A DNA stretch of 63,974 nucleotides, the filler included, from Sluysia triapertura (taxonomy: Eukaryota), in assembly GCA_046118255.1 (NCBI GenBank). It is 4 parts of 4 records of this genome, joined end to end, with 100 filler letters (N's around TTAATTAATTAA, not from the genome) between each part and the next. Parts side by side here need not be neighbours in the genome. Positions count along the whole stretch, not along the records: positions 13,420 to 40,740 come from JBJNIA010044349.1; 3 more parts are not named here. One strand, written 5' to 3'. Position numbers and translations under genes: made by a program. The notes below the pieces were generated by a model that searched no databases, was not told where the DNA came from, and worked only from the letters and a program-made list of their open reading frames with translations. Shown here piece by piece: positions 18,001 through 36,858 of this stretch. The stretch's first letter is position 1; the number at the start of each line of letters is the position of its first letter.

Positions 18001-18693
18001 TTATAGATAATATCCTAAAATATTTTTAAAATAGTCCTTAAAAATATTTACTAAATATATTTGCGTTTTTTCGCCATAATTCAAGAAACAATTAACATTT
18101 TTTTCATTAATTTCTTTAAAAGCCTTTAATACATTTTGAGGTAATATCTTTTCTTCTTTTGGGTTATAACCTTTTTCTGAAATAAATCCGCCTTGGGTTA
18201 AATTAATACTAACGATATTAGATTTACTGTTAGTTTTTACACATTTAGATGTATAAAAGAAAACATTAATTAGTCTTAAATATTTGAACATGAAATAGAA
18301 AATTACATAATTTGGCGTTATAAAATTATCTAACATTTCCATACATTCTTTTAAAAGATTAAATAGTTTTTTAAAATCTAGATCATTAAAGTTATTTTGC
18401 TTAATGATGTTTAATATAAACAATCCGCTCTTCAAACTATCAATATTTTCATATATATTTTTATAAAAAATTACAGGGGAGGCTTTTTTTAATTTACTCA
18501 TTTTGTCAAGTTTACCTAGAAAAATTTCTATTTCTGAAAAGGTAAAAAATAATAAACCTGCTCTATTTTTAGAAATAGGTTTGTTTATTCCTTTGGCTAA
18601 AAAAGTATATTTACCGTTATCTGAAAGGAAATTAATAATCTTATCGGATTCTTCATAATCTAATTCATCTATAACAAAGCCTTGAACTATCAT
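18001..18693 (-). CDS. recO: DNA repair protein RecO
   Basis: GFVIDELDYEESDKII...AKGINKPISK N-terminus; directly downstream of era. Confidence 0.9.
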   Translation of the reverse strand: MIVQGFVIDELDYEESDKIINFLSDNGKYTFLAKGINKPISKNRAGLLFFTFSEIEIFLGKLDKMSKLKKASPVIFYKNIYENIDSLKSGLFILNIIKQNNFNDLDFKKLFNLLKECMEMLDNFITPNYVIFYFMFKYLRLINVFFYTSKCVKTNSKSNIVSINLTQGGFISEKGYNPKEEKILPQNVLKAFKEINEKNVNCFLNYGEKTQIYLVNIFKDYFKNILGYYL

Positions 18694-18711
18694 AATATTT
18701 TAAATCTTATA

Positions 18712-19600: not shown

Positions 19601-20038
19601 CTATTTTATACTATTGTTAAATTTAGACATGATATTGTTTTCTAATTTTTGCATAATAAGTTTATTTTCTAGTTCTTCATGATCAAAATAAAATAAATGT
19701 AATATCCCATGACAAATCATAAAATATAATTCCTCTATCATTGAAGATGAATAATATTGAAATTGTTTATTAATTTGGTTCATTGATATGAATAATTCAC
19801 CTAATTCATGTTCTTGATTATTTGGGAAAGATAATATATCGGTGGTTTTATTTTTGTGTCGATAAGTATTATTTAAAAATGTCATATATTCATCATTAAT
19901 AAAAATAATAGAAATAGTATACTTACCTATATTTTTTTTATTAAGTTCTAATAAAACTAATTTAAAAAGTTTTTGAATATTATTTTTTATTTCTATATCC
20001 AGCTTGAATTGAGAGTCTTGATTGATAAAGTTAATCAT
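19601..20038 (-). CDS. ybeY: rRNA maturation endoribonuclease YbeY
   Basis: LNNTYRHKNKTTDILSF, LGELFIS, HGILHLFYFDH. Confidence 0.95.
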   Translation of the reverse strand: MINFINQDSQFKLDIEIKNNIQKLFKLVLLELNKKNIGKYTISIIFINDEYMTFLNNTYRHKNKTTDILSFPNNQEHELGELFISMNQINKQFQYYSSSMIEELYFMICHGILHLFYFDHEELENKLIMQKLENNIMSKFNNSIK

Positions 20039-21014
20039 TTAATTTAATTTTATATTGAAAAGTTTGAATTTCTTTACAAAATTTTAAGTAATTAAAAGAA
20101 TTAATAAAATTACTTATTATTATGAAAGCTATTAGGTTAATACTAATTACAGGAACATCAACATCTAATAATTGGAAAATTAAATACAATAATATGAAAA
20201 TAATAAATTCTAATCCTGAAACTTTCAATTTTTTGAGGTAATAAGTGATTATAGAAGCAAGAAATATAACAAAATAGTTTATTTGGTAACAATAAAAAAG
20301 ATTAATTAATATTATAAAAATAAGAAAAATTGATAAATTTACAAAATTTTTTATATCAATAAAAAATTTATTTAAATAATTATTTAGTAAGCAAAATATT
20401 ATAGTTAATAAAAATAATAAACATATCATAAATATGAAATTTTTATTAAATGTATCTATCAATAAAATTCTAGCAACAAACAACAAAATAATTAAAATTA
20501 ATTTGCTAGAAATATTAATAAACGTAGTAATTAAATATTTATAAAGCATAACTTTGTTATATTTAATGTTTTTATATGATAAGTAATAATTCTTTAAGTT
20601 TGTGTAATCAAATTTTTTTATATAAATAATCACATTTATATAATTTAGTAAAATGTCTTTAAAACTTATTTTAAAATAACCATTAATTGGACAAAAACAA
20701 TAAAAAATTTGATTAATTATTTTATAGCAAATAATAGCATGGAAACTGGATGGTTCTTTTTTTATTAAAATTATAGGAAATGCTAAATCTAATGATTGAA
20801 AAGTTGTTAAAGATATGTTTTTAATATATATTTTTGTGTTAAATTTTTTTAAAAATAATTCTAATTCATATAAGCTGATAGATTTATTTTTATAAATTAA
20901 TAACAAAAATTGTGGATAACCTATTAGGTTATTATATGAAACAAAATTAAATAATGAATAACAACAAGCAATTAGGCAATCATCAGCAAATAATTGTAAT
21001 TGAAATTTTGGCAC
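20031..21014 (-). CDS. Peptidase C39-like domain fused to TM helices, no ATPase domain
   Basis: QLQLFADDCLIAC resembles C39 Q-x-DCGxAC; FHAIICYKI...FCPING resembles HFVV...DPxxG; hydrophobic C-terminal half; overlaps the ybeY start. Confidence 0.6.
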   Translation of the reverse strand: MPKFQLQLFADDCLIACCYSLFNFVSYNNLIGYPQFLLLIYKNKSISLYELELFLKKFNTKIYIKNISLTTFQSLDLAFPIILIKKEPSSFHAIICYKIINQIFYCFCPINGYFKISFKDILLNYINVIIYIKKFDYTNLKNYYLSYKNIKYNKVMLYKYLITTFINISSKLILIILLFVARILLIDTFNKNFIFMICLLFLLTIIFCLLNNYLNKFFIDIKNFVNLSIFLIFIILINLFYCYQINYFVIFLASIITYYLKKLKVSGLEFIIFILLYLIFQLLDVDVPVISINLIAFIIISNFINSFNYLKFCKEIQTFQYKIKLND

Positions 21015-21068
21015 ACAAAATATAGTGTTTTTTATTTTATTAATAAATAAATAATTTAAAATATATAA

Positions 21069-21707
21069 ATGCCGAACAATAATTATATTGAAGTAAAATA
21101 TCCAAAAAAATTACAAGAAATTCAATTGTTATGAATTAAAGAATATCGCCACGTTATTATTTTGACATCAATTGCTTTATTATTTTTTATTTCTATTGTT
21201 ATATCAAATGCAGTTATTGATATTTACATTTTTAAAACATTATGAGATTCAAAAGCATACATTATCGAATTTAGCATTTTTATTTTTCTATTTGTTGTAA
21301 GTAATTTTTCACTATTTTGAATATATTTTTGAATGAAAAAAACCAAAGAAATAAATAAAATTCCGTGAGCTAGTTTGGGCTGTATTTTGTTGAATTTAGG
21401 ATGCTTTGTTTTATTAGTTGTTATGCTTATGCAACTGTATAGTCTTTTATTTTCAATAACTTTTAATTTCTTTGGCCAATTTACTGATTTACCAGTTTAT
21501 GGGAGACTTAGTTATAACCAAATATACAATATTCAAATGAATTTAATATATAGTAACATGGCATTTATTATTTTTTACATAATATATTTATTTATTTTAA
21601 GCATTAAAATATCCAAAATTAATCAATATCGCAGAATTATTTGAAACAATTATAATTCTAAATTTCAATGAATTAATAATGGTGAAACTACAAACAAACA
21701 AAAATAA
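21069..21707 (+). CDS. Hypothetical membrane protein, ~4 TM, 212 aa in code 4
   Basis: Open from ATG 21069 to TAA 21707 with TGA=Trp; only plus-strand gene found in this contig. Confidence 0.75.
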
Positions 21708-21827: not shown

Positions 21828-23675
21828 CTATAAGGATTGACTGTTCTCGCTACTACTTACTTTTTCTGATTTCAATTTTAAATAAGTGTTGCGATATCAA
21901 AATCCTAATCCAAAAAGTCCAATTAATCCTCCGGCACCAAGAACAATTAAAACAATTGCTCATGTTGGGAAAACATTAATTGAATTACTAGGATTTGGTT
22001 GTGGTGGGATAGGTTTTACTGGTATTATGTTTGTTCCACTTCCGTTTGTATTGTCTATTATTGGTTTTTCAGACATTTTACCAATTTGCAATAAATATTG
22101 AATTTTATTTCCTAATTTATCTTGAAGGGTTATTAGATATTTTCCGTGCCCAGTAATGCTACCACTGTTTTTAATTATATTGGTTGGTTTTCCTTTAAGA
22201 ATAATTTGTTTATTTACCATATCACAACTCTGATAAGTAGATGTTGTTAAATCTAAAATCGGGTCATGGAAAATATAGTTTAAATTAGGTGTGCCATTAT
22301 CTCCTTGGACAAATAAGAAATTAATATTTTCTTTCCCTCAGTTATAATAACCTAAATATTGTGTTAATTTGCAAGTTTTATCAGTAGAAAAATTATTTGT
22401 TCATGGATCAATTGATTTTTTAATGTAAAAATGATAGCTTAATGAAAGCCCGTTTGTTTTGGATACAACAATATTAAAAATGCCTTTGTTATCTTTGTTT
22501 GTTAGAATACAACTAAAATCACCGGCATTAATATAATCTTTCCCGTTTATGATAATTTTATTAATTGAACTATCATTTACATAAAATAAAATGTCATCAT
22601 TAATAAATTTATAGGTTTGCCCTTGGTATAAAGAATCCACTTCTTTTCCATTGGTTCTATATTTTACACCTGAAAAACCTTCATCTGTAGATTTTCACAA
22701 ACCATTGCTAGCTGTTCCTGCTAAAATGTCACCAGATTTATCCTGATAAAACGATGATATGCTTCAATTACTTTTAAGCCCATTTGTTATTTGAGTGAAA
22801 TCAACCCCATTAGTAGAATTTCATAAACCATTATAATCTGATCCTACTCATATATTTCCAGATTTATCCTGAATAATCGATTGTATGCTTCAATTATTAC
22901 CGATATTCCCATGAACTTGAGCGAAATTTAACCCATCAGTAGATTTATATAAACCATTATAATAAGTACTAGTTCATATATCCCCTTTATTATCTTGGAT
23001 AATTGAAACTATGTCTCAATTACTTCCGATCTTTCCATGAACCTGAGTGAAATTTACTCCATCATTTGATTTATATAAACCTTTTTTTTCTGTTCCTACT
23101 CAAACATTTCCTGCGTTGTCTTGAAAAATTGAATCTATATATCAATCACTTCCGATACCGCCATTAACTTTATTAAAATTTAATCCATCGGTAGATTTTC
23201 ATAGGCCATTACCAGCAGTAACAAATCAAATATTACCTAATAAATCTTGATAAATGCTATTGATTATTGCTGAATTACTTCCAATTCCTCAATCAACTAA
23301 GAAAAAATAGATTCCGTCAGTAGATTTTCATAAGCCATGATAATCTGTTCCTACTCATATATTTCCAGATTTATCCTGAATAATTGATTGTATACTTCAA
23401 TCACTTCCGATGCCGTCAGATACTTTATTGAAATTTACTCCATCAGTAGATTTTAATAAGCCGTTGTTTGTTGTCCCAACTCAAATATTACTTTTGTTAT
23501 CTTGAAAAGTAATATTTATAGCTCAATTACTTCCAACCCCTCCAGCAACTTTATTAAAAGTGAAATCTGTTTTTTTAGATGAATGTGGAGAAATGTTATA
23601 GATCGCTTGTATAATTGACCCAAAACAAAAAACCAAAATTCCTATCATTCATAAACTAGTTAATAACTTTTTCAT
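21828..23675 (-). CDS. Beta-propeller surface protein, copy 1 (615 aa)
   Basis: AGGAG RBS; signal MKKLLTSLWMIGILVF; seven WxIxSIxQDKxGNIWVGTxxxGLWKSTDGxNF repeats; stalk; Pro-rich linker; TM WAIVLIVLGAGGLIGLFG. Confidence 0.9.
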
Positions 23676-23949
23676 ATTTACTCCTGTTATATCTTTTACA
23701 AATCAACCCATTATTTTTATGGATTTATAAAAAAAATAAAACATGAATAATTTTAAAATATTTTTGGTTTTTTATTAAATTTTTTTTCTATTTACTAACT
23801 ATTTACTAATTGCTTACTAATAATAAATTATGTTTTGTATGGTTTTTTATTGTCATAATTTTTAGTAAAATGTAGTATTACCGTTAATAAATTTATATGT
23901 TTTCCCTCGAAATGTAAATTATACTTACTTGTTCTTTGGTATCGTGCCC

Positions 23950-24957
23950 CTATATTGAATAATTTTCATCAGTATATTTGAAAAGCCCATGACCCCCGGT
24001 CACAACTCAAATATTTCCAACATTATCTTGATAAATTGATCGTATAGTTCAATCGTTTGCTAACCCTCCACTCACTTGAGTAAAATTCACTTCGTCTATA
24101 GATTTTCATAAACCATTTTGTTCTGATCCGACCCAAATATTTCCTAATTTATCCTGAAAAATTGAACATATGCTTAAATCACTTCCGATGCCCTCAGATA
24201 CTTTATTGAAATTTACTCCATAAGTAGATTTTCACAAGCCATTATGATTTGTCCCCACTCAAATATTTCCTAATTTATCTTGAAAAATTGAAGATATATA
24301 TCAATTACTTCCAACCCCTCCAGCTACCTGTGTAAAATTTTCACCATCAATAGATTTTCATAGGCCATTCATAAAAGTGCCCACTCAAATATTTCCTTTA
24401 TTATCTTGAGTAATTGAAAATATAACTAAATTTGTTCCAAATTCCCCACTCACTTGGGTAAAATTCACTCCGTTAGTAGATTTTCATAACCCGCCTTGAA
24501 TAGTCCCCACTCAAATATTCCCAGACTTATCTTGGATAATACTAGTTATTGTATAATTTTTAAAATAACCACATATATCAAAACTATTTCCCCCATTAGT
24601 AGATTTTCATAAACCATTCGCAAATGTACCAACTCAAATATTTCCTATTTTATCTTGAAAAATTAAGTATATACCAATATTAGTTCCTAACCCATTAGTT
24701 ATTTGAATAAAATGATTTCCCCCGTCAGTAGATTTATATAAACCATGTAAAAGAGTACCAACTCAAATATTTCCATCTTTATCTACTAAAGTAGAATTAA
24801 TTTGAATATTTGTTCCTATCCCACCATCTACTTTAGCAAAATTAAAATTTATTGTTTTTAAATTTTGTGAAATACTATTATAAGTAGCTTGAGTAATTGT
24901 CCCTGCCCCAAAACTTAAAATTCCTATCATTCCTAAACTAGTTAATCATTTTTTCAT
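23950..24957 (-). CDS. Beta-propeller protein, copy 2 (335 aa): signal + 7 blades only, stalk and anchor lost
   Basis: Frame ends at TAG right after blade 7 (HGLFKYTDENYSI*); out-of-frame stalk remnant GKTYKFINGNTTFY at ~23860-23945. Confidence 0.8.
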
Positions 24958-25056
24958 ATTTCTCCTTTGGAAATTATATTTTTAAATATGTATTATTATT
25001 AATAAAACATATGAATTATATATATTTTTAATATCAAAACAAGATTATATTTATAT

Positions 25057-25080
25057 AAAAAAAATAACCTTGCGGTTATT
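25057..25080 (-). terminator. Rho-independent terminator downstream of copy 3
   Basis: Minus strand AATAACC-GCAA-GGTTATT hairpin running into a T tract. Confidence 0.8.
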
Positions 25081-25295
25081 CTCAAATAAGATGCATTTTT
25101 TATATTTACAATTGTTTAGAACTTAAATTATTTTGAATCTTTTCTATAAACAGAAATAAATTTATCTATCGAGCAATTAGAAATAATTTTTTGTTTTGTT
25201 AATTTAAATTTTCATTAATAATAACAATATGAGATCAAATACTAATAATTTCTAAAGCTAATATATCTTATAAATAAGAATTATTATCACTTACA

Positions 25296-27101
25296 TTAGT
25301 TTTTCTCAGGTTTTTGTTTTTGATGAGTATTGCGATATCATAATCATCATCCTATTAATCCAATTAATGCTAAACCACCAAGAACAATTATTATAATTGC
25401 TCATACTGGGAAGGTGTTTGGAATAGTTTTTGGTATGTCAGGAACTAGTGTGCTTCCGTCATTACTTTTATCCCCAGCTTTTGGTATAACTGGCTTATCA
25501 GTTGTATGTCCTATTTGTAATAAATATTGAATGTTATTTCCTAATTTATCTTGAATAGTTATTAAATATAAACCATAAACTAGGGCAAGATTTCCTGCTT
25601 TCTGTAGATTGGTTGGCGTACCTACAGCAAGAATTTTGCCATTTTCAAATGTACACTTTTGATAAATGGAATTTGTTAAATCTAAAATTGGGTCATCTAA
25701 AGTATATTTTAGATTTGGCATACCATTGTCCCCTTGAACAAATAAAAAATTAATACTATCTTTCCCTCAATTGTATTGACCTAAATACTGGGTTAGTTTG
25801 TAAGCACTATCTATGGAAAATTGATTTGTAGAAGGGTCGATTGATTGTTTGATGTAGAAATAATAGCTTAATAAAAAACCACTTGTTTTTGTTACTACGA
25901 TAGTAAAAATACCTTTATTTTCTTTACTTGTTAATACATATTTAAAATCAGTAACATTAGTATGATCTACACCATTAATAGTGATTTTATTAACCTCACT
26001 ATTTTTTGAATAAAATGTAGTATCGCCATTAATAAATTTATATGTTTGCCCTTGAAATATAGATTCTACTTCTTTTGCTCCTTTGGTATCATACCCTATA
26101 CCTGAATAATTTTCACTAGTTGATTCTCACAAACCATGATTTCTTGTTCCCACTCAAACATTTCCCACATTGTCTTGAATAATTGAATCTATATATCAAT
26201 CACTGCCGATACCACCATTAACCTTATTAAAATTTAATCCATCAGTAGATTTTCATAAACCATTTTTATCACTTCCTAACCATATATTTCCGAACCTATC
26301 TTGAAAAATTCAGAATATATTTCAATTATTTCCTATCCCGCCATTTACTTGGGTAAAATTTACTCCATTAGTAGATTTTCAAAGACCATTCTGAACAACC
26401 CCAGCTCATATATTTCCGGATTTATCTTGAATAATTGAGTATATATCTCAACTACTTAATAACCCACCACTAACTTGGGTAAAATTTACTCCATCTGTAG
26501 ATTTTCATAAACCATTATTGCCGGTTCCAACTCATATATTTCCAGATTTATCTTGAATAATTGAGTATATAATTCAATTATTTCCTATTCCACCATTAAC
26601 TTGACTAAAATTTGTTCCATCACTAGATTTTCACAAACCATTAAAACTTGTTCCCACTCAAATATTCCCTTTATTATCTTGAAAAATATTAATAATATAT
26701 CCGATATTATTTCCAACAATTACTTTGGTAAAATTTACTCCATCTGTGGATTTTCATAAACCATTACTGTTGGTTGCAACTCATATATTTCCAGATTTAT
26801 CTTGAATAATTGATAATATACTTCAATTAATTTCTAACCCGCCATTTACTTGGGTAAAATTTACTCCATTAGTAGATTTTCATAAACCATTTTTTTCAGT
26901 CCCTACTCAAAGAGTTCCGTTTTTATCTTGAAAAGTAGAATATATTGATCAATTACTTTCAATGCCGCCACCAATATTTGTAAAAGTAAAATTTACATCC
27001 TTTAAAGATTGTGAAACAATATTATAAGTAGCTTGAGTAATAGTTCCCACACCAAAACTTAAAATTCCTATCATTCCAAAACTAGCTAATAATTTTTTCA
27101 C
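25296..27101 (-). CDS. Beta-propeller surface protein, copy 3 (601 aa, GTG start)
   Basis: MKKLLASFGMIGILSFGVGTITQATYN; seven blades; stalk; TM; tail WWLWYRNTHQKQKPEKN*. Confidence 0.9.
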
Positions 27102-27145
27102 ATTTATTCCTAAATATTTTTTTATTATCTTTATACACTATTCTA

Positions 27146-27151
27146 ATTATA
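27146..27151 (-). promoter_or_regulatory. Putative -10 box (TATAAT) for copy 3
   Basis: AGAGTATAATT, conserved with the upstream region of copy 6. Confidence 0.5.
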
Positions 27152-27394
27152 CTCTTTGCTGCGTTTACTAACTATTTATTGAGTAATTAATTATATTTTT
27201 GTTTATTAATTTTAATTACTCAATAATAATTATTAAATAGTTATAAATAGGCATTGTAGTTAAAATAACTATAATGCCAAGAAATTATGCCTTGTTTTAT
27301 ATGATTTATAAAACTGAATAAAGCTATTTATATGAAATCAAATACTAATAATTTCTAAAGCTATTATGGATTATAGAAATTATTATCACTTACA

Positions 27395-29206
27395 TTAGTG
27401 TTTCTCAGGTTTTTGTTCTTGACGAGTTTTGCGATATCAGAATCATCATCCTATTAATCCAATTAATGCTAAACCACCAAGAATAATTATTATAATGGCT
27501 CATACTGGGAAGGCATTGGAAATAGTTTTTCCAGGAACTAGTTGGTCTCCGCTGTCATTTTTATCATTATCCCTTGGTATAACTGGTTTATCGGTAGATT
27601 TAGCAATTTGTAATAAATACTGAATTTTATTTCCTAGTTTATCTTGAATAGTAATTAAATATAATCCATAACCAGCAATCATTCCAGGTTGCACTAGATT
27701 AATTGGTTTCCCTACAACAAGAATTTTGCCATTTTCAAATGTACAATCTTGATAAGTTGAATTTGTTAAATCTAAAATTGGGTCATTTAAAGTATATTTT
27801 AGACTTGGAATACCAGTATCACCTCGGAGGAATAAAAAATTAATGTTATCTTGCCCTCAATCATATTTACCTGAATATTGTGCTAAAGTATTTGGGGAAT
27901 CAGCAAAAAATGCATTTGTTGATGGATCGATCGCTTGTTTAATATAAAAATAATAACTTAATGTAAGTTTATTTGTTTTTGTTACAACGATAGTAAAAAT
28001 ACCTTTGTCTTCTTTGCTTGTTAAAGTATATTTAAAATCACTAACATCAGTATAGTCTTTCCCATTTATGGTAATTTTATTAACCTGACTATTTTTTGAG
28101 TAAAAATCAGTATTACCATTAATGAATTTATATGTTTGACCATTAAATACAGATTCAACTTCTTTTGCCCCTCTAGTATCGTACCCCACCCCAACAAAAC
28201 TTTCATCAATTGATTCTCATAAACCGTTGTCTTTAGTACTAACTCAAATATCTCCGTCTTTATCTTGATAAAGTGATGCTATATTTCATTGGTTTCCTAA
28301 CCCACCACCAACTAGATTAAAATTCACTCCATCAGTAGATTTTCATAAACCATTTAGAGCTGTCCCGAATCATATGTCTCCTATTTTATCTTGTAAAATT
28401 GTATCTACATAAATCTCACTAGGTAAATTTCCTCCTGTAAATATTTTAAAATTTACTCCATCGGTAGATTTTCATAAACCATATATGCCTGCCCCAACTC
28501 AAATATTCCCGGCCTTATCTTGGTAAAGTTCTACTATATTTCAACTACTTCCGATTCCTCCACCAACTTTGTTAAAACTTATTCCTCCATTAGTTGTTTT
28601 AAATAGTCCATTTCGTTCTGTCCCAACTCAAATATTTCCAGTTTTATCTTGAAACACCATATTTATATTTCAATTACTTCCAATGATTCCATTACTAATT
28701 ATTTGTGTAAAATTCAATCCATCAGTAGATTTTCATAGACCATTACCTCAAGTTGAGACTCAAATATTTCCGGCTTTATCTTGAAATAATGATTGTATAT
28801 CCCAATTACTCCCGATTCCCCCACCAACTTTGGTAAAATTTACACCATTGCCAGATTTTCATAAACCTTCAGAAAAGGTTGCCACTCAAATATTGCCAAA
28901 TGTATCAATAATAGCTGAATATATATTTCAATTACTTCCGATTCCCCCGCCTACTTGGGTAAAATTCACTCCATTAGTAGATTTTCATAAACCATTCTTT
29001 CATGTTCCTACTCATATAGTTCCGGACTTATCTTGCAAAGTAAATCTTATATTTCAATTACCCCCAATTCCCCCGCCTACTGATTTAAAAGTAAAATTTA
29101 TATCTTTTAAAGATTGGGAAACAATATTATAAGTGGCTTGGGTAATTGTTCCTACGCCAAAACTTAAAATACCTATGATGCTCATGTTAGATAATAATTT
29201 CTTCAT
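27395..29206 (-). CDS. Beta-propeller surface protein, copy 4 (603 aa)
   Basis: AGGAG RBS; MKKLLSNMSIIGILSFGVG; same architecture; start and stop in frame. Confidence 0.9.
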
Positions 29207-29214
29207 ATTGCTCC

Positions 29215-29520
29215 TAATATTATTTATTATACTTGGTTTTTTAATAGTATTTTCCCCTCTATTACTGTTCTATTTCAAATAAATAATTTCTTTTTTGATA
29301 TTAAAATGAATGATTTTAAATGTGTTTTAAAATTTAAATTTTTATTGTTAATCATACATGGATAATTAACATAAAACTTACAATAATAGTTAAAGTTAAA
29401 ATAACTAGAATTACAAAAGTAATTACTGTAATTATTTAAATAATTAATAGAACCGATGAAACTATCTATATAAGATCAAAACCAATAATTTCTAAAGCTA
29501 TTATGGATTATAGAAATTAT
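29215..29520 (-). pseudogene. Frameshifted remnant of the small membrane gene at 31348-31767
   Basis: Shared blocks AGTTAAAATAACTAGAATTA, TTTTAAAATTTAAATTTTTATT and GATATTAAAAT; FVILVILT segment followed by stops. Confidence 0.65.
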
Positions 29521-29531
29521 TATTAGTTATA

Positions 29532-31334
29532 TTAGTTTTTCACGGATTTTTGTTTTTGATGAGTATTACGATATCACAATCATCATCCTATTAATCCGAT
29601 TAATACTGACCCACCAAGAACAATTATCACAATGGCTCACACCGGGAAGGAATTAGCAGTAGGTTTTGCAGGTAATATTGTTGTTCCGTTTTCGTTTTTA
29701 GATACTACTGGTTTATCAGTTGTTTTACCAATTTGTAATAAATATTGAATTTTATTTCCTAATTTATCTTGAATAGTTATTAAATATAAACCATGACCTG
29801 GGGCAATGCTTCCAGGATTATTTGCTAGATTAGTTGGCTTTCCTACAACAAGAATTTTTCCATTTTCAAACGTACATTCTTGATAAGTGGAATTCGTTAA
29901 ATCTAAAATTGGATCATTTAAGGTATATGTTAGATTTGGTGTACCTTTATCCCCTTGAAGAAATAAAAAATTAATGTTATCTTGCCCTCAATCGTATACA
30001 ACTGAATATTGAGATAACTTATAATTATTGTCAGTAGAAAAGATATTTGTTGACGGATCAATTGTTTTTTTAATGTAAAAATAATAGTTCAATGTAAGAT
30101 TATTTGTTTTGGTTACAACAATATTAAAAATACCTTTATTTTCTTTATTTGTTAAAGTATATTTAAAATCAGCAACATTAGTATGATCTTTCCCATTTAT
30201 CGTAATTTTATTAACTGAACTATTTTTTGAGTAAAATGTAGTATCACTATTGATAAATTTATATGTTTGCCTTTGAAATGTGGATTCTACTTCTTTTCCT
30301 CCATTGGTATTGTACCCTACACCCGAAAAACCTTCATCGGTAGATTTTCATAAACCATAGGATTGTGTTGATACTCAAATATCTCCAACATTATCTTGAT
30401 AAATTGAATTTATACCTCAATTAATTGCTAATCCTCCGCTAACTTGGGTAAAATTTACTCCATCTGTAGATTTTCATAAACCCTTATTCGTTGCAAATCA
30501 AATGTTGCCAATTTTATCTTGGCAAATTAAATATATGAAAGAAATACTACCAATATTCCCGGTAATTTTGTTAAATGTTTTTCCATCATCTATAGACTTT
30601 CATAAACCATTACCCGTAACTCCTACTCATATATTTCCGGTCTTATCTACACATATACTATCTATGCTTCAATTGATTTCAATACCTCCACTAACTTGTA
30701 TAAAATTTATTCCATCAGTAGATTTTCAAAGACCATTCATAGAAGTCCCTACTCAGTAATTACCTTTATTATCCTGAGTAATTGGAGTTATGTCTCAGCC
30801 ACTACTTGCACTAGAGCCCACATTTACTCGTTCAAAAGTTTTTCCATCATCTGATTTATATAAACCGTGCCCACTAGTTCCAACTCAAATATTTCCTAAT
30901 TTATCTTGAAACAAGTAATTTACATTCCAACTGGTTACTAATCCGCTACCTATTTGAGTGAAAGTTACTCCATCATTAGTTGATTTTCATAAACCATTAT
31001 CTCGCGTGCCAACTCAAATATTACCTAACTTATCTTGAAGCATTGTTTGTATATGTCAATCTTTACCTATTAGACCGGTTATTTGTGTAAAATTCACTCC
31101 ATCAGTAGATTTTCATAAACCTTTTCCGCCAGGGGCAACTCAAATATTCCCTAACTTATCTTGAAAAGTAAAAATTATTCTTCAACTACTTTCAATACCA
31201 CCACTAACTTGCGTAAAAGTAAAATTTATATCTTTTAGAGTTTGAGAAACAATGTTATAAGTGGCTTGGGTAATTGTTCCTACGCCAAAACTTAAAATAC
31301 CCACCATTCCCAAACTAGCTAATATTTTTTTCAT
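29532..31334 (-). CDS. Beta-propeller surface protein, copy 5 (600 aa)
   Basis: AGGAG RBS; MKKILASLGMVGILSFGVG; same architecture; absent from the ORF track because of frequent TGA-Trp. Confidence 0.9.
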
Positions 31335-31347
31335 ATTTACTCCTACA

Positions 31348-31767
31348 CTATTTACTTATTATATTTAGTTCTTCATTATATTTTTTTACTTGATATCATT
31401 CTTCTCCAAATAAATAATGTTCTTTCTGAATATTAAAATAAGTTCTTTGAAATCTATTTTTAAAATTTAAATTTTTATTTTTTAATCATTCATTAATAAT
31501 CAATACAGCACTTATAATGGCCATTATAGTTAAAATAACTAGAATTATAAAAGGAATTGGTATAGTACTTAATGGATTATAGAAGCTTGTAAAAACATCT
31601 GTATTAACCAATAAACTAATAAACGCTAAAATTATAAAGTTTGCTATTACAAACCGAATATAAAAGAAAATTCAAACATATTTAATTTTGTATTTAAAAA
31701 ATGTATTAATAGTGAATTTAATAGGATAATAAAAAATGTATTTTAATATCTTAAATATTATTGACAT
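31348..31767 (-). CDS. Small membrane protein (139 aa in code 4), 2-3 TM, immediately upstream of copy 5
   Basis: MSIIFKILKYIFYYP...PFIILVILTIMAIISAVLIINEWLKNKNLNF...NIISK*; stop abuts the RBS of copy 5. Confidence 0.7.
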
Positions 31768-31981
31768 ATATCTTATTTTACAACTTTTTACTTAGTGTAT
31801 TTTAGAGTTATTTATTTTATTTATCATATAAACAATTATTTATTCAATAAATTAACTAATAATGATATATTACTCTAGTAATATCATAACTAACTCAACA
31901 CATTTAACATTTTTCAATATAGTTAATTATTTATTTTTGCAACTTAATTAACTAACTTTGTTAATTTAAAATATTTTGTTC

Positions 31982-33820
31982 TTATAAATGAGAATTTTTA
32001 TTTTTACTATAAGTGTTTTCTTGATTTTGTTTTTTATGAGAACGGCGATAAAACAGCAATCATCATATTAAACCAATTAATGCTATGCCACCAAGAACAA
32101 TCAATACAATTGCCCACACTGGGAAGGTATTATTGGAAACAGGTTTTGGTATATCTGGGGATACCGGCTCTGGGGGGTTATTTTTATCCTCAGGGTTAGG
32201 TATAACTGGCTTATCGGTGGTTTTCCCAATTTGTAATAAATATTGAATTTTATTTCCGATTTTATCTTGAATAGTTACTAGATATAAACCATAACCTGGG
32301 GCAATGCTTCCAGTTTGCATTAGATTAGTTGGTTTCCCTACGGCAAGAATTTTGCCATTTTCAAATGTGCAACTTTGATAAGTAGAATTCGTTAAATCTA
32401 AAATTGGGTCATTTAAAATATATTTTAGACCCGGCGAGCCACTATCTCCTTGGAGGAATAAAAAATTAATGTTATCTTGCCCTCAATCATATTTACCTGA
32501 ATATTGTGCTAAATTATTTTGGGATTCAGTAGAAAAGACATTTGTTGCTGGGTCAATCGCTTTTTTAATGTAAAAATAATAGTTTAATGAAAGGCCATTT
32601 GTTTTGGATACAACAATATTAAAAATACCATTGTTTTCTTTGTTTGTTAATGTATAGTTAAAATCACCAGTATTAGCATGATCTTTCCCATTTATTGTAA
32701 TTTTATCAATTGTACTATTCTTTACATAAAATTTAGCATCGTCACTTATAAATTTATATGTTTGACCCTGATATGTGGATTCTATTTCTTTTCCTGAGGT
32801 AGTGTATCCAACTCCAGTAAAATTTTCGTCTGTAGATTTTCACAAACCCTCATTCATTGTTCCTACTAATATATTATCTTTATTGTCTTGATAAATAGAA
32901 TATAGCATCCAATCATTTCCGATTCCTCCACCAACTTGGGTAAAATTTGTTCCATCCGTAGATTTTCATAGGCCTTTGACACCTGTTCCGACTCACAAGA
33001 ATCCCATTTTATCTTGAAATATTGAGAATATGGTTTCTGTAGCTGGTATTCCGCTAGTTACTTTGGTAAAAGAATTTCCCCCATTAGTAGATTTTCATAA
33101 GCCATCCTCTGATCCGACCCAAATATTTCCTAATTTATCCTGAAAAAGTGATTTTATAGTTAATTTACTTGTTATCCCACCACTAACTTGAGTAAAATTT
33201 ACACCATTAGTAGATTTTCATAGGCCTTTGTTATTTATTCCTGCCCACATATTTCCATTTTTATCTTGAAGCAAACTATTTATCGGTCAACCGATTCCTA
33301 TTTCAAAGCCAACTTGAAAAAAATCAGAGCCTCCATTAGTAGATTTTCATAAGCCATTATTGGCTGTTCCAATAAATATATGCTCATTTTGATTTATATA
33401 TAAGCTTTGTATGCTTCAATCTAATCCTATCATCTTGCCAACTTGGGTAAAATTCACTCCATCAGTAGATTTTCACAAACCATTACCTTGAGTACCCACT
33501 CATAAATTACCCGTTTTATCTTGACATAGATTTGAAATATTTCAATCCTTCCCAATTCCTCCACCAACTTGGGTAAAATTAACTCCGTCAGTAGATTTTC
33601 ATAAACCGTTACTAATAGTTGCAACTCAAATATTTCCATTTTTATCTTGAAAAATATTATATATTGTTCATTTACTTCCGATTCCCGCAGATACTTTATT
33701 AAAAGTAAAATTTACATCCTTTAAAGATTGCGAAACAATATTGTAAGTAGCTTGAGTAATTGTCCCAACACTAAAACTTAGGATTCCTATCATTCCTAAA
33801 CTAGTTAATCATTTTTTCAT
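31982..33820 (-). CDS. Beta-propeller surface protein, copy 6 (612 aa)
   Basis: AAGGA RBS; MKKWLTSLGMIGILSFSVG; seven blades; stalk; linker IPNPEDKNNPPEPVSPDIPKP; TM. Confidence 0.9.
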
Positions 33821-33864
33821 AGTCATCCTTAAATATTTTTTATTATCTTTAATAATCTATTTTA

Positions 33865-33870
33865 ATTATA
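33865..33870 (-). promoter_or_regulatory. Putative -10 box (TATAAT) for copy 6
   Basis: AGAGTATAATT about 45 nt upstream of the start codon. Confidence 0.5.
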
Positions 33871-33910
33871 CTCTTCGTTATATTTGACTAACTATTTACT
33901 TAGGAATTAA

Positions 33911-34906
33911 TTATATTTTTGTTGACTTTTTTTGATCGTCAAACTTATCATATGCCTTAACTATTTCTTTAACAAGTGGATTACGAACAATATCTCCTTC
34001 TGTTAATTTAACTAACTTAATGCTCTTAACATTTTTTAATATATTTAATGCGGATAACAATCCAGAAACGACATTAAATTTTAAATCTATTTGAGTAATA
34101 TCCCCTGTAATAACCATTTTGCTATTAAATCCAAGTCTTGTTAAAAATAATTTCATTTGATTAAAATTACTATTTTGGGCTTCATCTAAAATTACAAAGC
34201 AATTATCAAATGTTCTTCCGCGCATAAAGGCAAGGGGGGCTATTTCAATAACATTTGTTTTTAATAAATTCTCAGTTTTTTCTTTTCCTAGAATAAAATA
34301 CAAAGAATCATATAAAGGAATCAAATAAGGGTCAATTTTTTCTTTTAATCCACCTGGTAAGAATCCTAACTCTTCTCCTGCTTCGATAGCTGGTCTAGAT
34401 AAAATAATTTTTTTAATTAAGTTACTTTTAAGCATCTCGATTGCATAAACCATTGCAATAAATGTTTTCCCAGAACCAGCCGGTCCAATACAAAAAATTA
34501 ATTCATTGTTTTGTAATATATTTAAATATTCAACTTGTCCTAATGTTTTAGGATAAATTTTTCGACCCTCATAATTTGATGTAATTGGCTTTTCATATAG
34601 CTCTTTTATTTCATCTTTTTTATCATCTTCTAGTATATTTTTGTTATTTGAACATAAATAATTAATATCTCATGAACGAATTTTATTAGATTTATCTTTA
34701 TTTGATATATCTATTAATGTTTTTATAATAGAAAGTACTTTTTTAGCTTTCTCTTCACTATCAGCATTAATAATAATGTATGATGGTTGAATTTCTATGA
34801 ATGTATTTGTTTTTTCTTCTAATAGATTAATGTTTCGGTTATTAACACCAACTACATTAGTAATATTTTGAATTATTGGGTCTATATTATATTTAAATGG
34901 TTTCAT
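33911..34906 (-). CDS. phoH: PhoH-like ATPase, 331 aa in code 4
   Basis: GPAGSGKT, RPAIEAGEELGFLPG, LAFMRGRT, ILDEAQN, GDITQIDL; joined through TGA at 34670. Confidence 0.97.
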
Positions 34907-34920
34907 TGGTTTATTTTTCC

Positions 34921-36858
34921 TTAAGATATATTATTTTTATTTTTTTCTATCTCTTTTTTTATGTGCGAATTTTTATTAGCTTCGCTTCTAGTATTTTTAA
35001 AACTCCTTTTTAAAACATTAGCAAAAAAGAATGCTCCACCTTTAACACGCATCTTGTTTCCGAAAACTTTAAGCATAACTTTTCCTCTTCCTGAAAGAAT
35101 ATCTTTTAAAGAATTACTGTAGGTTCAGACAAAATAAGTTGATTCTAATGCTTTTTCAAAGGTCATTTCTTTTAAAACTGCAAATTTAGCTCCTAAATGC
35201 ATTTGAAAATTATATTTCTCATCAAGTGTAAAGCCAATTGTTTTATTAATATATTTAGGATAAGGCTCATAGTTTTCAACCATAAATACTAATATTTCTT
35301 TTGCATTTAAATGGTCAATTGCTGAATATTCATTACTTTTAATTTTTACATCTAGCGCCGATGTAACAAAACTTGTTGTTAGGAAAATACTATTTCCTCT
35401 TATTCCTGGGTATCCATCAATTGATGCTATTAAGGCATTTTTATAAATTGTTTCAAATGATCTTTTTTCTAAACTATAATTAACAGTTGCCGGAATGCCA
35501 TAAACATTACCTTTTTCTCTACCAATTTTATCGTTTATTAATTTTGATGTATAAACCTTGCAATATGTTATGTAAGTAGATAATAATGGGAACAAGGCAA
35601 TTATTCTTCCTTTAACGTATTTTTCTATTTCTTCTACTTTTTGGTTATTTATATTTTCTAAAACATCATATATTTTAATAACAAATGAGCCAGTTTTAAG
35701 TGGATTATCTGAATAGATGCTATTCATATTGTAGATATATAAGGGACTTTTTTTATAACCATATTGTGTTATTTTTTCAATGATTTTTTTTGTACCTTCT
35801 CAATTCATCCCATCATAAACTGTGTAGATAGGTTCATGAATATTAAAGATCCCTAAATTTTTACTTACACCTAAATGGATGATGATTTCTGAAATTGCTT
35901 TCTCTTGTTCATTAATGATTTTTTTATATTCCAATAATGATTTATCTTTGGAAGTAAATTTTTCTAGACTATCTTGAATTGAATTAGCAAAAATATATTT
36001 TGATCCTTTATATACAAAGTTTTTTAATTTATCATCATTTTTTTTATCACAATATATATTGGTTATATTATTCCCAGAATTTTTAACTTTAACCACTTCT
36101 TGGTTTAATTTTAATGTACCTTCTAATTGATGAATTTTATTTTCTAACGATTTTAACAAAGCATTAGTATAGTTTTTTACATAATGAAATCCACCAATTA
36201 AATAATGAGATAAGTTATATAGAAATGATTTTATTTCTAATTTATCATATGATAATCCGAAAAATGGTCAAAATATTTCAAAAAATCATAGTACAGAAAT
36301 ATCATTATGAAAATAATTCATTAAGAATTCTTCAACTGTTGGATATTTTTGAAATTCTGGAATATTGTATTTATAATCAACCCTAATTGATTTTAAAATG
36401 CCAAAAAAACTATCTATTTGTTGCGATACAAGCGGATGCTTTCTTTTTAATATTGATCCAATCATTTTTCAATCATTTGGAAAAATTATCCGATCTTTAT
36501 TATTTTGGAAAACTAACATCGTTTTAGATTTAAAATAATTAACATTTTCTAATTGAAGGCTATCTAATACACTATATGCAAATGAAGAAAGTGATAAATC
36601 AATAGGTACTCAATTATCAAAAATGTATGTTTGGTTATTAATGAATTCTGTTTGTGTATATAAATAACCTCCAACACTTTCATTTTTATCTATTAAGATT
36701 GTTGATTCTTTTCTAGTTAATAAAAATATTGTTGTTAGTAACCCTGAAAGACCACCACCAATAACTATGTTTTTAAAACTTCGCTTATCTGATTTTTTAA
36801 TTTTAGATTCTTTTTTTACTTTTCTTTTGTCCTGAACTTCTTCTATTTCATATATCAT
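34921..36858 (-). CDS. FAD-dependent oxidoreductase (phytoene desaturase-like) with a putative C-terminal SCP2 lipid-binding domain, 645 aa in code 4
   Basis: IVIGGGLSGL...IDKNESVGG Rossmann fold; HYLIGGFHY; GNVYG; three ORF pieces in one frame; C-terminal SFKDILSG...VFGNKMRVKG resembles SCP2. Confidence 0.7.

What the first reader, a model, noticed from the sequence alone, without database searches (positions are those of the whole stretch)
22680..33720. Hypervariable positions at fixed sites in otherwise near-identical blades
Seen: the blade framework is highly conserved, but W-[x]-I-[x]-S and GT-[xxx]-GL differ in almost every blade. Examples are WAINI, WSIQS, WYIDS, WDIVS, WNIFW, WTIRS and GTTNNG, GTDYHG, GTEKKG, GTLLHG, GTFMNG, GTRNHG. 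Known: in propellers the start of strand A and the B-C loop lie on the same face, and fungal HET-E WD40 repeats diversify a few such codons under concerted evolution. Inference: each paralog displays a different binding surface on a constant scaffold, giving a repertoire for host-ligand specificity or immune/phage evasion.
Basis: partly seen in the sequence, partly recalled or inferred. Interest (0 to 1): 0.85.

Follow-up and report, generated by a model that had tools for sequence, protein, structure and literature searches.

The report
Variable-faced surface propeller gene family
A wall-less, Mollicute-like bacterium carries six tandem copies of a membrane-anchored seven-bladed propeller protein whose 42 blades share a conserved scaffold but differ at five fixed positions each, probably giving each copy a different binding surface.

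Summary
Read with TGA as Trp, 21828-33820 (minus strand) holds six tandem paralogs. Five are about 600 aa (signal peptide, 7 blades of 42 aa, about 200 aa orphan all-beta region, Pro-rich stalk, TM anchor); one is truncated after blade 7. Blades are Reg_prop (PF07494) repeats, each followed by an (s-)Asp-box.

The blades are not near-identical. Framework identity is about 60% aa and 70% nt, and silent sites are about 80% saturated. HET-E-style concerted evolution is therefore not supported, except weakly within paralog g3.

In the few recently related blade pairs the five codons changed faster than silent sites (omega about 6, p 6e-5 to 5e-6). Parsimony counting puts only these five columns above 1.

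By topology, four of the five lie on the propeller's entry face and one on the exit face. No 3-D model of the propeller could be made.

Best reading: an old paralog repertoire of surface ligand-binding propellers under diversifying selection. Ligand and organism are unknown, and the C-terminal region has no homolog anywhere searched.

The parts
31982..33820 (-). g6: paralog of 612 aa. Signal/TM 33820..33695; 7-blade propeller 33694..32810; C-terminal all-beta region and Pro-rich stalk 32809..32117; TM and tail 32116..31985.
   Evidence: Table-4 ORF; 7 blades; RBS and TATAAT upstream.
29532..31334 (-). g5: paralog of 600 aa. Propeller 31208..30318; C-terminal region 30317..29640; TM and tail 29639..29535.
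27395..29206 (-). g4: paralog of 603 aa. Propeller 29080..28187; C-terminal region 28186..27503; TM and tail 27502..27398. Example hypervariable codons of blade 1: 29051-29053 (N), 29045-29047 (R), 29024-29026 (S), 29000-29002 (W), 28997-28999 (K).
25296..27101 (-). g3: paralog of 601 aa with a GTG start. Propeller 26975..26097; C-terminal region 26096..25404; TM and tail 25403..25299. Its blades are the most alike at silent sites.
   Evidence: Within-gene pS is 0.41 against 0.52 for random sets, p about 0.001. The g3b2/g3b4 pair is 92% nt identical in the framework yet differs at 4 of 5 variable sites.
23950..24957 (-). g2: truncated paralog of 335 aa, with signal peptide and 7 blades (24831..23950), then a stop. 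It has no C-terminal region and no TM anchor.
   Evidence: The conserved Trp before the first variable site is lost in 5 of its 7 blades.
23859..23926 (-). Decayed remnant of the start of g2's deleted C-terminal domain (motif GKTYKFINGNTTFY, then a stop).
   Evidence: Repeat family D12; frame translation.
21828..23675 (-). g1: the most divergent paralog, 615 aa. Propeller 23549..22665; C-terminal region 22664..21963; TM and tail 21962..21831.
   Evidence: Its blades 1-2 resemble g2 blades 5-6 (88% and 82% nt).
31348..31767 (-). 139-aa predicted membrane ORF between g6 and g5. It is part of the ancestral duplicated unit. Decayed copies lie at 29325-29424 and 27189-27288.
   Evidence: Table-4 ORF; repeat family D13; translations.
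33911..34930 (-). phoH-like gene directly upstream of the array. It marks one border of the array, which sits in the conserved order phoH / ybeY-era-recO-...-glyS-dnaG.
   Evidence: Pfam PhoH E 4e-71; ORF.
19601..20038 (-). ybeY, the conserved-operon gene on the other side of the array. Two uncharacterised ORFs (21069-21707 on the plus strand, 20031-21110 on the minus strand) lie between g1 and ybeY.
   Evidence: Pfam YbeY E 2e-31; ORFs.

Best explanation
The locus encodes a lineage-specific family of six tandem surface proteins (five intact, one truncated) in a Mollicute-like bacterium that reads TGA as Trp.

Each protein has these parts:
- An N-terminal signal sequence.
- One closed seven-bladed beta-propeller. 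Its blades are hybrid Reg_prop plus (s-)Asp-box repeats.
- About 200 aa of orphan all-beta sequence.
- A Pro-rich stalk, a C-terminal membrane anchor and a short basic tail.

Shown: purifying selection holds the blade scaffold constant (omega about 0.2) even though silent sites are almost saturated. Five fixed positions per blade are as variable as random sequence.

Inferred: four of these positions lie on the entry face around the central shaft. They are the two residues flanking the Ile at the start of strand 1, next to a conserved Trp, and two residues in the strand 2-3 turn. This is where propellers, including the Reg_prop sensor BT4663, bind ligands. The fifth position is at the tip of the strand 1-2 turn on the exit face.

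Shown with caveats: after gene and blade duplications these codons were driven apart faster than silent sites, which indicates diversifying selection.

Inferred consequences:
- Each paralog shows about 28 unique entry-face residues on one constant scaffold. The array is thus a hard-wired repertoire of different ligand-binding surfaces, most plausibly for glycans or other host or environmental surface molecules.
- The diversity comes from ordinary duplication, occasional blade duplication or conversion, and point substitution. It does not come from programmed hypermutation or from HET-E-like homogenisation.
For: Anatomy:
- Table-4 ORFs and architecture.
- 42 blades and no others in the piece.
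- One 41-aa blade matches Pfam Reg_prop above its gathering score (23.1 against 20.4 bits). It also matches the solved HTCS sensors 4a2l and 3v9f at E 1e-11.
- 38 of 42 blades carry the s-Asp-box or Asp-box motif. That motif always lies between strands 3 and 4 (PMC2716378).
- An N-terminal K-D-[VI]-N-F-T-F copies strand 4 and suggests velcro closure.
- Every gene has its own RBS and -10 box.

Variability:
- Five columns have 3.25-3.91 bits, within or just above the range of 42 random draws, which is 3.17-3.86.
- Identity at these sites is 8.3%, and 7% between same-numbered blades of different paralogs.
- Their composition is depleted in Ile/Leu and enriched in Asn, Ser, Asp, Gly, Ala and Gln relative to mutational equilibrium.

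Selection:
- Framework pN is 0.25 against pS 0.52; the variable sites have pN 0.67.
- In three blade pairs chosen on framework pN alone, pN at the variable sites is 0.65 against pS 0.26 (Fisher p 1.5e-4).
- Pairwise ML gives omega_hv 5.9 (LRT 16.0, p 6e-5) and 6.6 (LRT 20.7, p 5e-6), with omega_framework 0.18-0.19.
- The five closest pairs differ at 22 of 25 variable sites against 35 of 185 framework sites.
- Parsimony counting puts only the five columns above 1 (1.32-1.83).

Face assignment and ligand site: PMC5121618 states that strand 1 lines the shaft and starts on the entry side, that strand 2-3 loops protrude on the entry side, and that BT4663 binds its disaccharide on the entry faces.
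Against: - No 3-D model of the propeller could be made. The face assignment rests on motif-based strand assignment and general topology.
- One variable site lies on the opposite face and is equally variable.
- The same positions are also unconserved in the BT4663 blades that aligned to the query. They may therefore simply be the positions this fold leaves free.
- Across most comparisons silent sites are near saturation, so omega cannot be told apart from 1 there (control set C).
- The omega estimate rests on 15-25 codon comparisons in pairs chosen after the fact. The five columns were themselves chosen for being variable, so there is a winner's curse.
- There are no orthologs, strains or reads to test current polymorphism.
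- There is no ligand, host or expression information.
- The glycan idea is only an analogy with HTCS sensors and Asp-box propellers.
Confidence: 0.55

Rival explanations
1. Relaxed constraint only. The five positions are solvent-exposed turn and edge residues that the Reg_prop fold does not need. They have drifted to saturation in old duplicates, and the paralogs may all do the same job.
For: - Entropy at the five sites equals that of random draws.
- Overall, pN at the variable sites (0.67) equals pS.
- The exit-face site is as variable as the entry-face sites.
- The equivalent positions also vary among the blades of BT4663.
- Silent sites are about 80% saturated, so the duplicates are old.
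Against: - In the least-diverged blade pairs these codons are already saturated while silent sites are only 17-39% different. ML gives omega of about 6 and rejects omega = 1.
- Counting gives 1.3-1.8 for these columns only.
- The composition is not at mutational equilibrium: Ile plus Leu number 20 against 58 expected, and Gly, Ala and Asp are 3-6 times enriched.
Confidence: 0.25
2. Antigenic variation or immune or phage evasion. The array is a set of alternative surface antigens or receptors. Expression switches between copies, or copies exchange cassettes, as in the Mollicute Vsp/Vlp/VlhA/MgPa systems. The variable face is the epitope or phage-contact surface rather than a ligand site.
For: - The array is a tandem family of surface-anchored proteins in a wall-less bacterium with constant ends and a variable middle.
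- Exchange does occur. The g3/g4 3' ends are 93% nt identical with pS 0.045. g1 blades 1-2 resemble g2 blades 5-6.
- The truncated g2 could act as a donor cassette.
- Diversifying selection fits evasion as well as it fits ligand tracking.
Against: - Every copy has its own RBS and -10 box.
- There is no lipobox Cys in 5 of the 6 signal peptides.
- No inverted repeats flank the promoters.
- No repeat tract suited to slipped-strand switching was found, apart from one A8 run upstream of g1.
- The copies are old and divergent rather than freshly shuffled.
Confidence: 0.15
3. HET-E/NWD-like concerted evolution. Repeats are kept nearly identical by continual unequal exchange within and between genes, while selection diversifies a few codons.
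For: - The geometry is very similar: 42-aa blades, with one variable pair at the strand 4-to-1 entry and one in the strand 2-3 turn, about 17-18 residues apart (PMC1805685).
- g3 shows lowered silent divergence among its own blades (0.41 against 0.52, p about 0.001). The g3b2/g3b4 pair is 92% nt identical yet differs at 4 of 5 variable sites.
Against: - Mean framework nt identity is about 70% whether blades come from the same gene, the same position or neither.
- Framework pS is 0.52 against 0.645 at full saturation. HET-E repeats reach 100% identity (PMC1805685).
- All six genes have exactly 7 blades, so there is no variation in repeat number.
Confidence: 0.05

Closest known systems
Reg_prop (Pfam PF07494) beta-propellers of Bacteroides hybrid two-component sensors (BT4663 = PDB 4a2l/4a2m, BT4673 = 3v9f, BT3049 = 3ott)
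   Same: The blade motif is the same (I-x-S-I-x-x-D-x-x-G-x-[IL]-W-[IV]-G-T-x-x-G-L). One blade matches Pfam above threshold and matches the PDB at E 1e-11. Both are seven-bladed and extracytoplasmic. In BT4663 the ligand (a disaccharide) binds on the entry face (PMC5121618).
   Different: These proteins have one propeller, not two. They have no Y_Y_Y domain hit and no kinase or receiver domains, because the cytoplasmic tail is only about 20 aa. They are anchored by a C-terminal TM helix. Their blades are far more alike (about 60% aa) and each carries an (s-)Asp-box. The C-terminal region has no homolog.
Predicted Asp-box/Reg_prop hybrid-blade propellers (Quistgaard & Thirup 2009, PMC2716378; example: Clostridium phytofermentans A9KRI6)
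   Same: A Reg_prop motif is followed within about 3 residues by an Asp-box-type hairpin in the same blade. 38 of 42 blades fit S/t-x-D/n-x-x-x-F/y or the regular spacing that is one residue longer. The example is also from the Bacillota side of the tree.
   Different: I could not fetch or compare that protein. Here the short (s-) form dominates (31 blades against 7), and the protein is membrane-anchored in an organism that reads TGA as Trp.
Fungal HET-E/HET-D/NWD hypervariable WD40 repeats (PMC1805685, PMC2873952)
   Same: The scaffold is a constant propeller of 42-aa blades. A few fixed codons are under diversifying selection, in one pair near the strand 4-to-1 entry and one pair in the strand 2-3 turn, on the top face. 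Nearly every repeat has a unique combination (41 of 42 here; 55 of 69 there).
   Different: The repeat family differs (Reg_prop, not WD40). There is no NLR architecture, and the proteins are extracellular rather than cytoplasmic. Repeats here are about 70% nt identical with near-saturated silent sites, against up to 100% identity and clear concerted evolution there. Repeat number does not vary here.
Propeller plus Ig-like paralog families of isopod-gut mollicutes (Hepatoplasmataceae; PMC10928387)
   Same: Both are Mollicutes with 7-10 paralogs that carry an N-terminal seven-blade propeller followed by beta-sandwich domains. Those authors proposed them as host-interaction proteins.
   Different: PhoH, YbeY and RecO of this window have no close relative in the collections.
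Mollicute variable surface protein systems (Vsp, Vlp, Vsa, VlhA, MgPa)
   Same: Both are tandem multigene families of surface proteins in wall-less bacteria with conserved ends.
   Different: These proteins are not lipoproteins. They lack low-complexity in-frame repeats and invertible or slipped-strand promoter elements. All copies look independently expressible.

Membership tests
Reg_prop beta-propeller repeat (Pfam PF07494) | Match to the family HMM at or above the gathering score | tested here: met
   One stop-free 41-aa blade scores 23.1 bits (cut-off 20.4), E 6.7e-5. A second blade scores 16.7 bits and a third blade piece gave no hit. Whole proteins could not be submitted, because the tools read TGA as a stop.
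Reg_prop beta-propeller repeat (Pfam PF07494) | Sequence similarity to solved Reg_prop propellers | tested here: met
   phmmer of one blade gives 4a2l and 3v9f at E 1e-11 and 3ott/3va6 at 5e-4, matching many blades of each chain.
Reg_prop beta-propeller repeat (Pfam PF07494) | Seven repeats closing into one propeller | tested here: inconclusive
   There are exactly 7 repeats per gene, plus an N-terminal copy of strand 4 that suggests velcro closure. No 3-D model of the propeller was possible.
Hybrid two-component system (HTCS) sensor | Two tandem propellers (14 repeats), a Y_Y_Y domain, and cytoplasmic histidine kinase, receiver and DNA-binding domains | tested here: not met
   There are 7 repeats only. 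The C-terminal pieces give no Y_Y_Y or any other Pfam hit. Only about 20 residues follow the TM helix.
Asp-box / s-Asp-box propellers | Motif S-x-D-x-G-x-x-W or S/t-x-D/n-x-x-x-W/f/y in the hairpin between strands 3 and 4 | tested here: met
   7 blades have the regular spacing, 31 have the short spacing and 4 have neither. The motif definition is from PMC2716378. The structural position is inferred, not seen.
HET-E/NWD-type hypervariable repeats | Repeats nearly identical at DNA level within and between genes (concerted evolution) | tested here: not met
   Framework nt identity is 0.695 within a gene, 0.703 for the same blade number and 0.688 otherwise. pS is 0.523 against 0.645 at saturation. 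Only g3 is lower, at 0.41.
HET-E/NWD-type hypervariable repeats | A few codons with dN above dS | tested here: met
   Omega_hv is 5.9-6.6 in the closest pairs, p 6e-5 to 5e-6. Counting gives 1.32-1.83 for the five columns only. Caveats: few codons, pairs and columns chosen after the fact, and saturation elsewhere.
HET-E/NWD-type hypervariable repeats | Selected residues all on the top (entry) face | not testable with these tools
   By topology, four of the five lie on the entry face and one on the exit face.
HET-E/NWD-type hypervariable repeats | WD40 repeats in an NLR (NACHT) protein | tested here: not met
   The blade pieces hit Reg_prop, not WD40. The architecture is that of a signal-anchored surface protein.
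Mollicute phase-variable surface lipoproteins (Vsp/Vlp/Vsa type) | Lipoprotein signal with a lipobox Cys | tested here: not met
   There is no Cys in the signal peptides of g2-g6. g1 has a Cys, but in an atypical L-V-F-C context.
Mollicute phase-variable surface lipoproteins (Vsp/Vlp/Vsa type) | Switch element: a homopolymer or dinucleotide tract in the promoter, or inverted repeats for a recombinase | tested here: inconclusive
   No convincing inverted repeats were found. The upstream regions carry ordinary -10 boxes and RBS. Only g1 has an A8 run upstream. No recombinase was seen among the ORFs listed in the piece.
Diversity-generating retroelement target | A nearby reverse transcriptase and template repeat, with variable codons of NNY type derived from AAY | tested here: not met
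   No reverse-transcriptase-like ORF was seen among the ORFs listed in the piece, and the flanking genes tested are housekeeping genes. No template-like extra repeat was found. 35% of the variable codons end in A or G, and they include Lys, Gln, Glu, Met and Trp codons.

The most novel reading that the evidence does not exclude
The array is a bacterial, extracellular counterpart of the fungal HET-E/NWD principle. Blade-level duplication or conversion, visible in g3 and between g1 and g2, followed by strong diversifying selection on four entry-face residues per blade, would keep generating new recognition specificities on a Reg_prop/s-Asp-box hybrid propeller. That would make it a germline-encoded recognition repertoire in a minimal-genome bacterium, in a protein family whose C-terminal region had no detectable homolog in any collection searched.
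Probability: 0.25. Interest if true: 0.65.

Novelty: new variant of a known kind. Interest (0 to 1): 0.45.

Why it matters
Wall-less bacteria with tiny genomes spend little DNA on anything non-essential. Here about 12 kb, split into six copies of one surface propeller, interrupts a conserved housekeeping gene order. That suggests the family matters for how the organism meets its surroundings.

The locus is a clean natural example of a constant scaffold with about 28 variable face residues per protein. It would be directly testable with recombinant ectodomains.

It also gives sequence-level support, across 42 blades, for the hybrid Reg_prop/Asp-box blade that was predicted in 2009 but, as far as I know, never characterised.

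It shows as well that HET-E-like site patterns can arise without concerted evolution.

Tried and rejected
- Table 11 ORF calling breaks every gene at TGA. Table 4 was needed.
- Searches for homologs of the C-terminal region:
  - The 1.84-billion-protein representative library gave only repeat noise from cadherin, Calx-beta and one unrelated 980-aa repeat protein.
  - GTDB genomes, JGI metagenomes, plasmids, NCBIfam, Pfam and PDB profiles all gave nothing.
- A code-independent DNA pattern for I-W-x6-G-L-W-K-S-T found 120 single matches in metagenomes. None has blade-HMM hits, so they are chance matches.
- Organism identification failed. The best PhoH match is 65% (an Anaeroplasmataceae MAG), the best YbeY match is 40%, and RecO found nothing.
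- AlphaFold2 models of the two C-terminal pieces had pLDDT 47 and 42. They are all-beta but unusable, so no fold search was run.
- The sigma-70 promoter scan is uninformative in 25% GC DNA: 98 sites found against 90 expected.
- A DGR, invertible promoters and a single expression site were rejected.
- The first ML run did not converge for the 5-pair set. It was repeated with bounded multi-start optimisation.
- Step left out: Pfam, PDB, homolog and AlphaFold2 runs on a full-length paralog or on the whole propeller. Only stop-free pieces were used: 41-42 aa for blades and 116-139 aa for C-terminal pieces.

Full report
**What is there**

The piece 13420-40740 has about 25% G+C. Under the standard bacterial code it shows only short ORFs across the finding. 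Read with TGA as Trp (table 4) it resolves into ordinary genes. In the six genes of interest 128 of 135 Trp codons are TGA. These TGA codons sit in the alignment columns where Reg_prop propellers have their conserved Trp.

Flanking genes are DnaG, GlyS-like, Era, RecO, YbeY, PhoH and an AhpC-type peroxiredoxin. Their order, phoH / ybeY-era-recO-...-glyS-dnaG, is from my own knowledge typical of Bacillota and Mollicutes. The source organism has no close relative in the collections:
- PhoH is at best 65% identical, to an Anaeroplasmataceae MAG.
- YbeY is at best 40% identical.
- RecO found nothing.

**The gene array**

Six paralogs lie head to tail on the minus strand between phoH and ybeY:

| Gene | Coordinates | Length |
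|---|---|---|
| g6 | 33820..31982 | 612 aa |
| g5 | 31334..29532 | 600 aa |
| g4 | 29206..27395 | 603 aa |
| g3 | 27101..25296 | 601 aa |
| g2 | 24957..23950 | 335 aa |
| g1 | 23675..21828 | 615 aa |

Each intact protein has these parts, in order:
- An N-terminal signal/TM segment. Five of the six have no lipobox Cys.
- A short K-D-[VI]-N-F-T-F stretch that copies the last strand of a blade.
- Seven 41-44-aa blades.
- About 200 aa of conserved sequence without any homolog.
- A Pro-rich stalk, a TM helix and a short basic tail.

g2 stops right after blade 7. A decayed start of its C-terminal domain survives at 23859-23926. Every gene has its own AGGAG-type RBS and a TATAAT box. A blade HMM finds the repeat only in these six ORFs.

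**Family of the blades**

Only stop-free pieces could be given to the tools.
- One 41-aa blade matches Pfam Reg_prop (PF07494) above its gathering score.
- The same blade matches the solved Bacteroides hybrid two-component sensors 4a2l and 3v9f at E 1e-11.
- Directly after the Reg_prop motif, 38 of 42 blades carry S/t-x-D/n-x-x-x-F/y (31 blades) or the form that is one residue longer (7 blades). These are the s-Asp-box and Asp-box motifs, which always lie between strands 3 and 4 of a blade (PMC2716378).

That paper predicted such hybrid Reg_prop/Asp-box blades in a Clostridium protein. This locus is a clean 42-fold example at sequence level.

The motifs fix the strand assignment as follows:

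| Element | Sequence |
|---|---|
| Strand 1 | x-I-x-S-I-F-Q-D |
| Turn 1-2 | K-x-G |
| Strand 2 | N-I-W-V-G-T |
| Turn 2-3 | x-x-N-G |
| Strand 3 | L-W-K-S-T |
| Hairpin 3-4 | the (s-)Asp-box |
| Strand 4 | N-F-T-Q-V |
| Linker to the next blade | x-G-G-I-G-S-N-W |

The C-terminal region gave nothing in any search:
- Pfam and NCBIfam.
- PDB profiles.
- The 1.84-billion-protein representative library, where only Ig-repeat noise appeared.
- GTDB genomes, JGI metagenomes and plasmids.

AlphaFold2 models of its two stop-free pieces are all-beta but have low confidence (pLDDT 47 and 42), so no fold search was run.

**The observation**

In the alignment of the 42 blades, five columns have 3.25-3.91 bits of entropy and 11-17 different residues. 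They are W-[x]-I-[x]-S, QDK-[x]-G and GT-[x][x]-NGL. The next most variable column has 2.54 bits, and many columns are nearly invariant. G-L, for example, is present in 42 of 42 blades.

Three corrections apply:
- The third residue of 'GT-xxx-GL' is Asn in 26 of 42 blades.
- The QDK-x-G site was missed.
- The blades are not near-identical. Framework identity is 60% at protein level and about 70% at DNA level.

At the five sites pairwise identity is 8.3%, which equals the neutral expectation of 8.1%. Between same-numbered blades of different paralogs it is 7%. 41 of 42 blades have a unique combination.

**How the pattern arose**

Blades are equally distant whether they come from the same gene (0.695 nt identity), from the same blade number in another gene (0.703) or from neither (0.688). 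Framework pS is 0.523, against 0.645 +/- 0.014 when synonymous codons are randomised. Silent sites are therefore about 80% saturated.

The scaffold is thus held by purifying selection on the protein (pN 0.25, omega about 0.2), not by ongoing homogenisation. This separates the locus from the fungal HET-E/NWD repeats, which reach 100% identity within and between genes (PMC1805685).

Traces of exchange do exist:
- g3's own blades are more alike at silent sites (0.41 against 0.52, p about 0.001).
- g1 blades 1-2 resemble g2 blades 5-6 (88% and 82% nt).
- The 3' ends of g3 and g4 are 93% nt identical, with pS 0.045.

**Selection at the five sites**

Over all pairs, pN at the five sites (0.67) equals pS (0.67 at those codons, 0.52 in the framework). 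With that much saturation the result cannot separate neutrality from positive selection.

The few recently related blade pairs are informative.
- In three non-overlapping pairs chosen only on low framework pN, pN at the variable sites is 0.65 against framework pS 0.26 (Fisher p 1.5e-4).
- A pairwise MG94-F3x4 likelihood model with separate omega for the two site classes gives omega 5.9 for these three pairs (LRT 16.0, p 6e-5).
- For five pairs it gives omega 6.6 (LRT 20.7, p 5e-6), with framework omega 0.18-0.19.
- Unrelated control pairs are saturated and uninformative.
- In the five closest pairs, 22 of 25 variable-site residues differ against 35 of 185 framework residues.
- Parsimony counting on a framework tree puts only the five columns above the mean silent rate (1.32-1.83; all others 0.96 or less), including the other loops.

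Composition at the sites is not at mutational equilibrium. Ile plus Leu number 20 against 58 expected, and Asn, Ser, Asp, Gly, Ala and Gln are enriched. This fits exposed, selected positions.

Caveats:
- Few codons carry the signal.
- The pairs and the columns were both chosen after seeing the data.
- No orthologs or reads are available.

**Where the sites lie**

No model of the propeller could be made. This step was left out.

By topology, strand 1 lines the shaft and starts on the entry side, and strand 2-3 loops protrude on the entry side (PMC5121618). The same rule places the HET-E sites on the top face (PMC1805685). The strand-1 pair (i and i+2, so on the same side of the strand, next to a Trp conserved in 31 of 42 blades) and the strand 2-3 pair therefore share the entry face. 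That gives about 28 variable residues per propeller around the shaft. This is where BT4663 binds its disaccharide (PMC5121618).

The QDK-x-G residue is at the tip of the strand 1-2 turn, on the exit face. It is as variable, and changes as often (4 of 5 close pairs), as the entry-face sites. Variability alone is therefore not proof of a binding role.

The equivalent positions also vary among the blades of BT4663. The unusual feature here is less that these sites vary than that everything else is held so constant across 42 old blades.

**Mechanisms considered and rejected**

- A diversity-generating retroelement. I saw no reverse-transcriptase-like ORF in the piece and no template repeat, and 35% of the variable codons end in A or G.
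- Invertible promoters. No meaningful inverted repeats were found.
- A single expression site. All genes have their own start signals.
- Classical Mollicute variable lipoproteins. There is no lipobox and no slippery tract, apart from one A8 run upstream of g1.

**Verdict**

- Fixed variable sites on a constant scaffold: yes.
- Mostly one face: inferred, not shown.
- dN above dS: yes, with caveats.
- Concerted evolution like HET-E: no.
- Host, immune or phage function: untested.

The most likely reading is an old, lineage-specific repertoire of surface ligand-binding propellers under diversifying selection. The closest architectural analogue in Mollicutes is the propeller plus Ig-like paralog families reported from isopod-gut Hepatoplasmataceae (PMC10928387).

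This is a new variant of known kinds, namely Reg_prop and Asp-box propellers and constant-scaffold/variable-site repertoires. It is of moderate interest.

Noticed in passing
window 13420-40740 (whole piece): The organism reads TGA as Trp: 128 of 135 Trp codons in the six paralogs are TGA. G+C is about 25%. Tools that use table 11 fragment nearly every gene.
   Followed up: yes
window 23859-23949: g2 ends right after blade 7. Downstream lies a decayed in-frame remnant of the C-terminal domain start (GKTYKFINGNTTFY, then a stop), so about 0.8 kb (C-terminal domain, stalk and TM anchor) was deleted. g2 has also lost the conserved Trp before the first variable site in 5 of its 7 blades.
   Followed up: partly
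window 31348-31767 (-); decayed copies at 29325-29424 and 27189-27288: A 139-aa predicted multi-TM ORF lies between g6 and g5, and recognisable but broken copies lie in the next two spacers. The ancestral duplicated unit was therefore the propeller gene plus a small membrane-protein gene. Its function is unknown.
   Followed up: partly
window 25291-25418 versus 27390-27517: The 3' ends (TM helix and tail) of g3 and g4 are 93% nt identical with pS 0.045, while their propellers have pS 0.47. This points to recent gene conversion confined to the 3' end.
   Followed up: partly
window 26097-26975 (g3 propeller): g3's blades are significantly more alike at silent sites than any other set (mean pS 0.41 against 0.52, p about 0.001). 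Blades 2 and 4 are 92% nt identical in the framework yet differ at 4 of 5 variable sites. This looks like local blade duplication or conversion.
   Followed up: yes
window 21828-34930: The 12-kb array sits between phoH and ybeY, which belong to a gene order conserved in Bacillota and Mollicutes. Two uncharacterised ORFs (21069-21707 on the plus strand, 20031-21110 on the minus strand) also lie between g1 and ybeY.
   Followed up: no
window 18001-18699, 19601-20038, 33911-34930: The housekeeping proteins have no close relatives in the collections: RecO found nothing, YbeY is at best 40% identical and PhoH at best 65%. The source is a deep or fast-evolving lineage, or it is absent from the databases.
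   Followed up: partly
window 25057-25080 (-): A terminator-like hairpin (AATAACC-GCAA-GGTTATT followed by a run of T) lies in the spacer between g3 and g2. The simple scan did not list it. Comparable hairpins were not looked for in the other spacers.
   Followed up: no
about residues 34-42 of each paralog, e.g. window 29081-29107 in g4: A K-D-[VI]-N-F-T-F-x-x-V stretch before blade 1 copies the blade's fourth strand. The seventh blade in turn lacks a normal fourth strand (it reads S-T-D-E-x-F-S-G-V). This suggests velcro closure of the ring by the N-terminus.
   Followed up: partly
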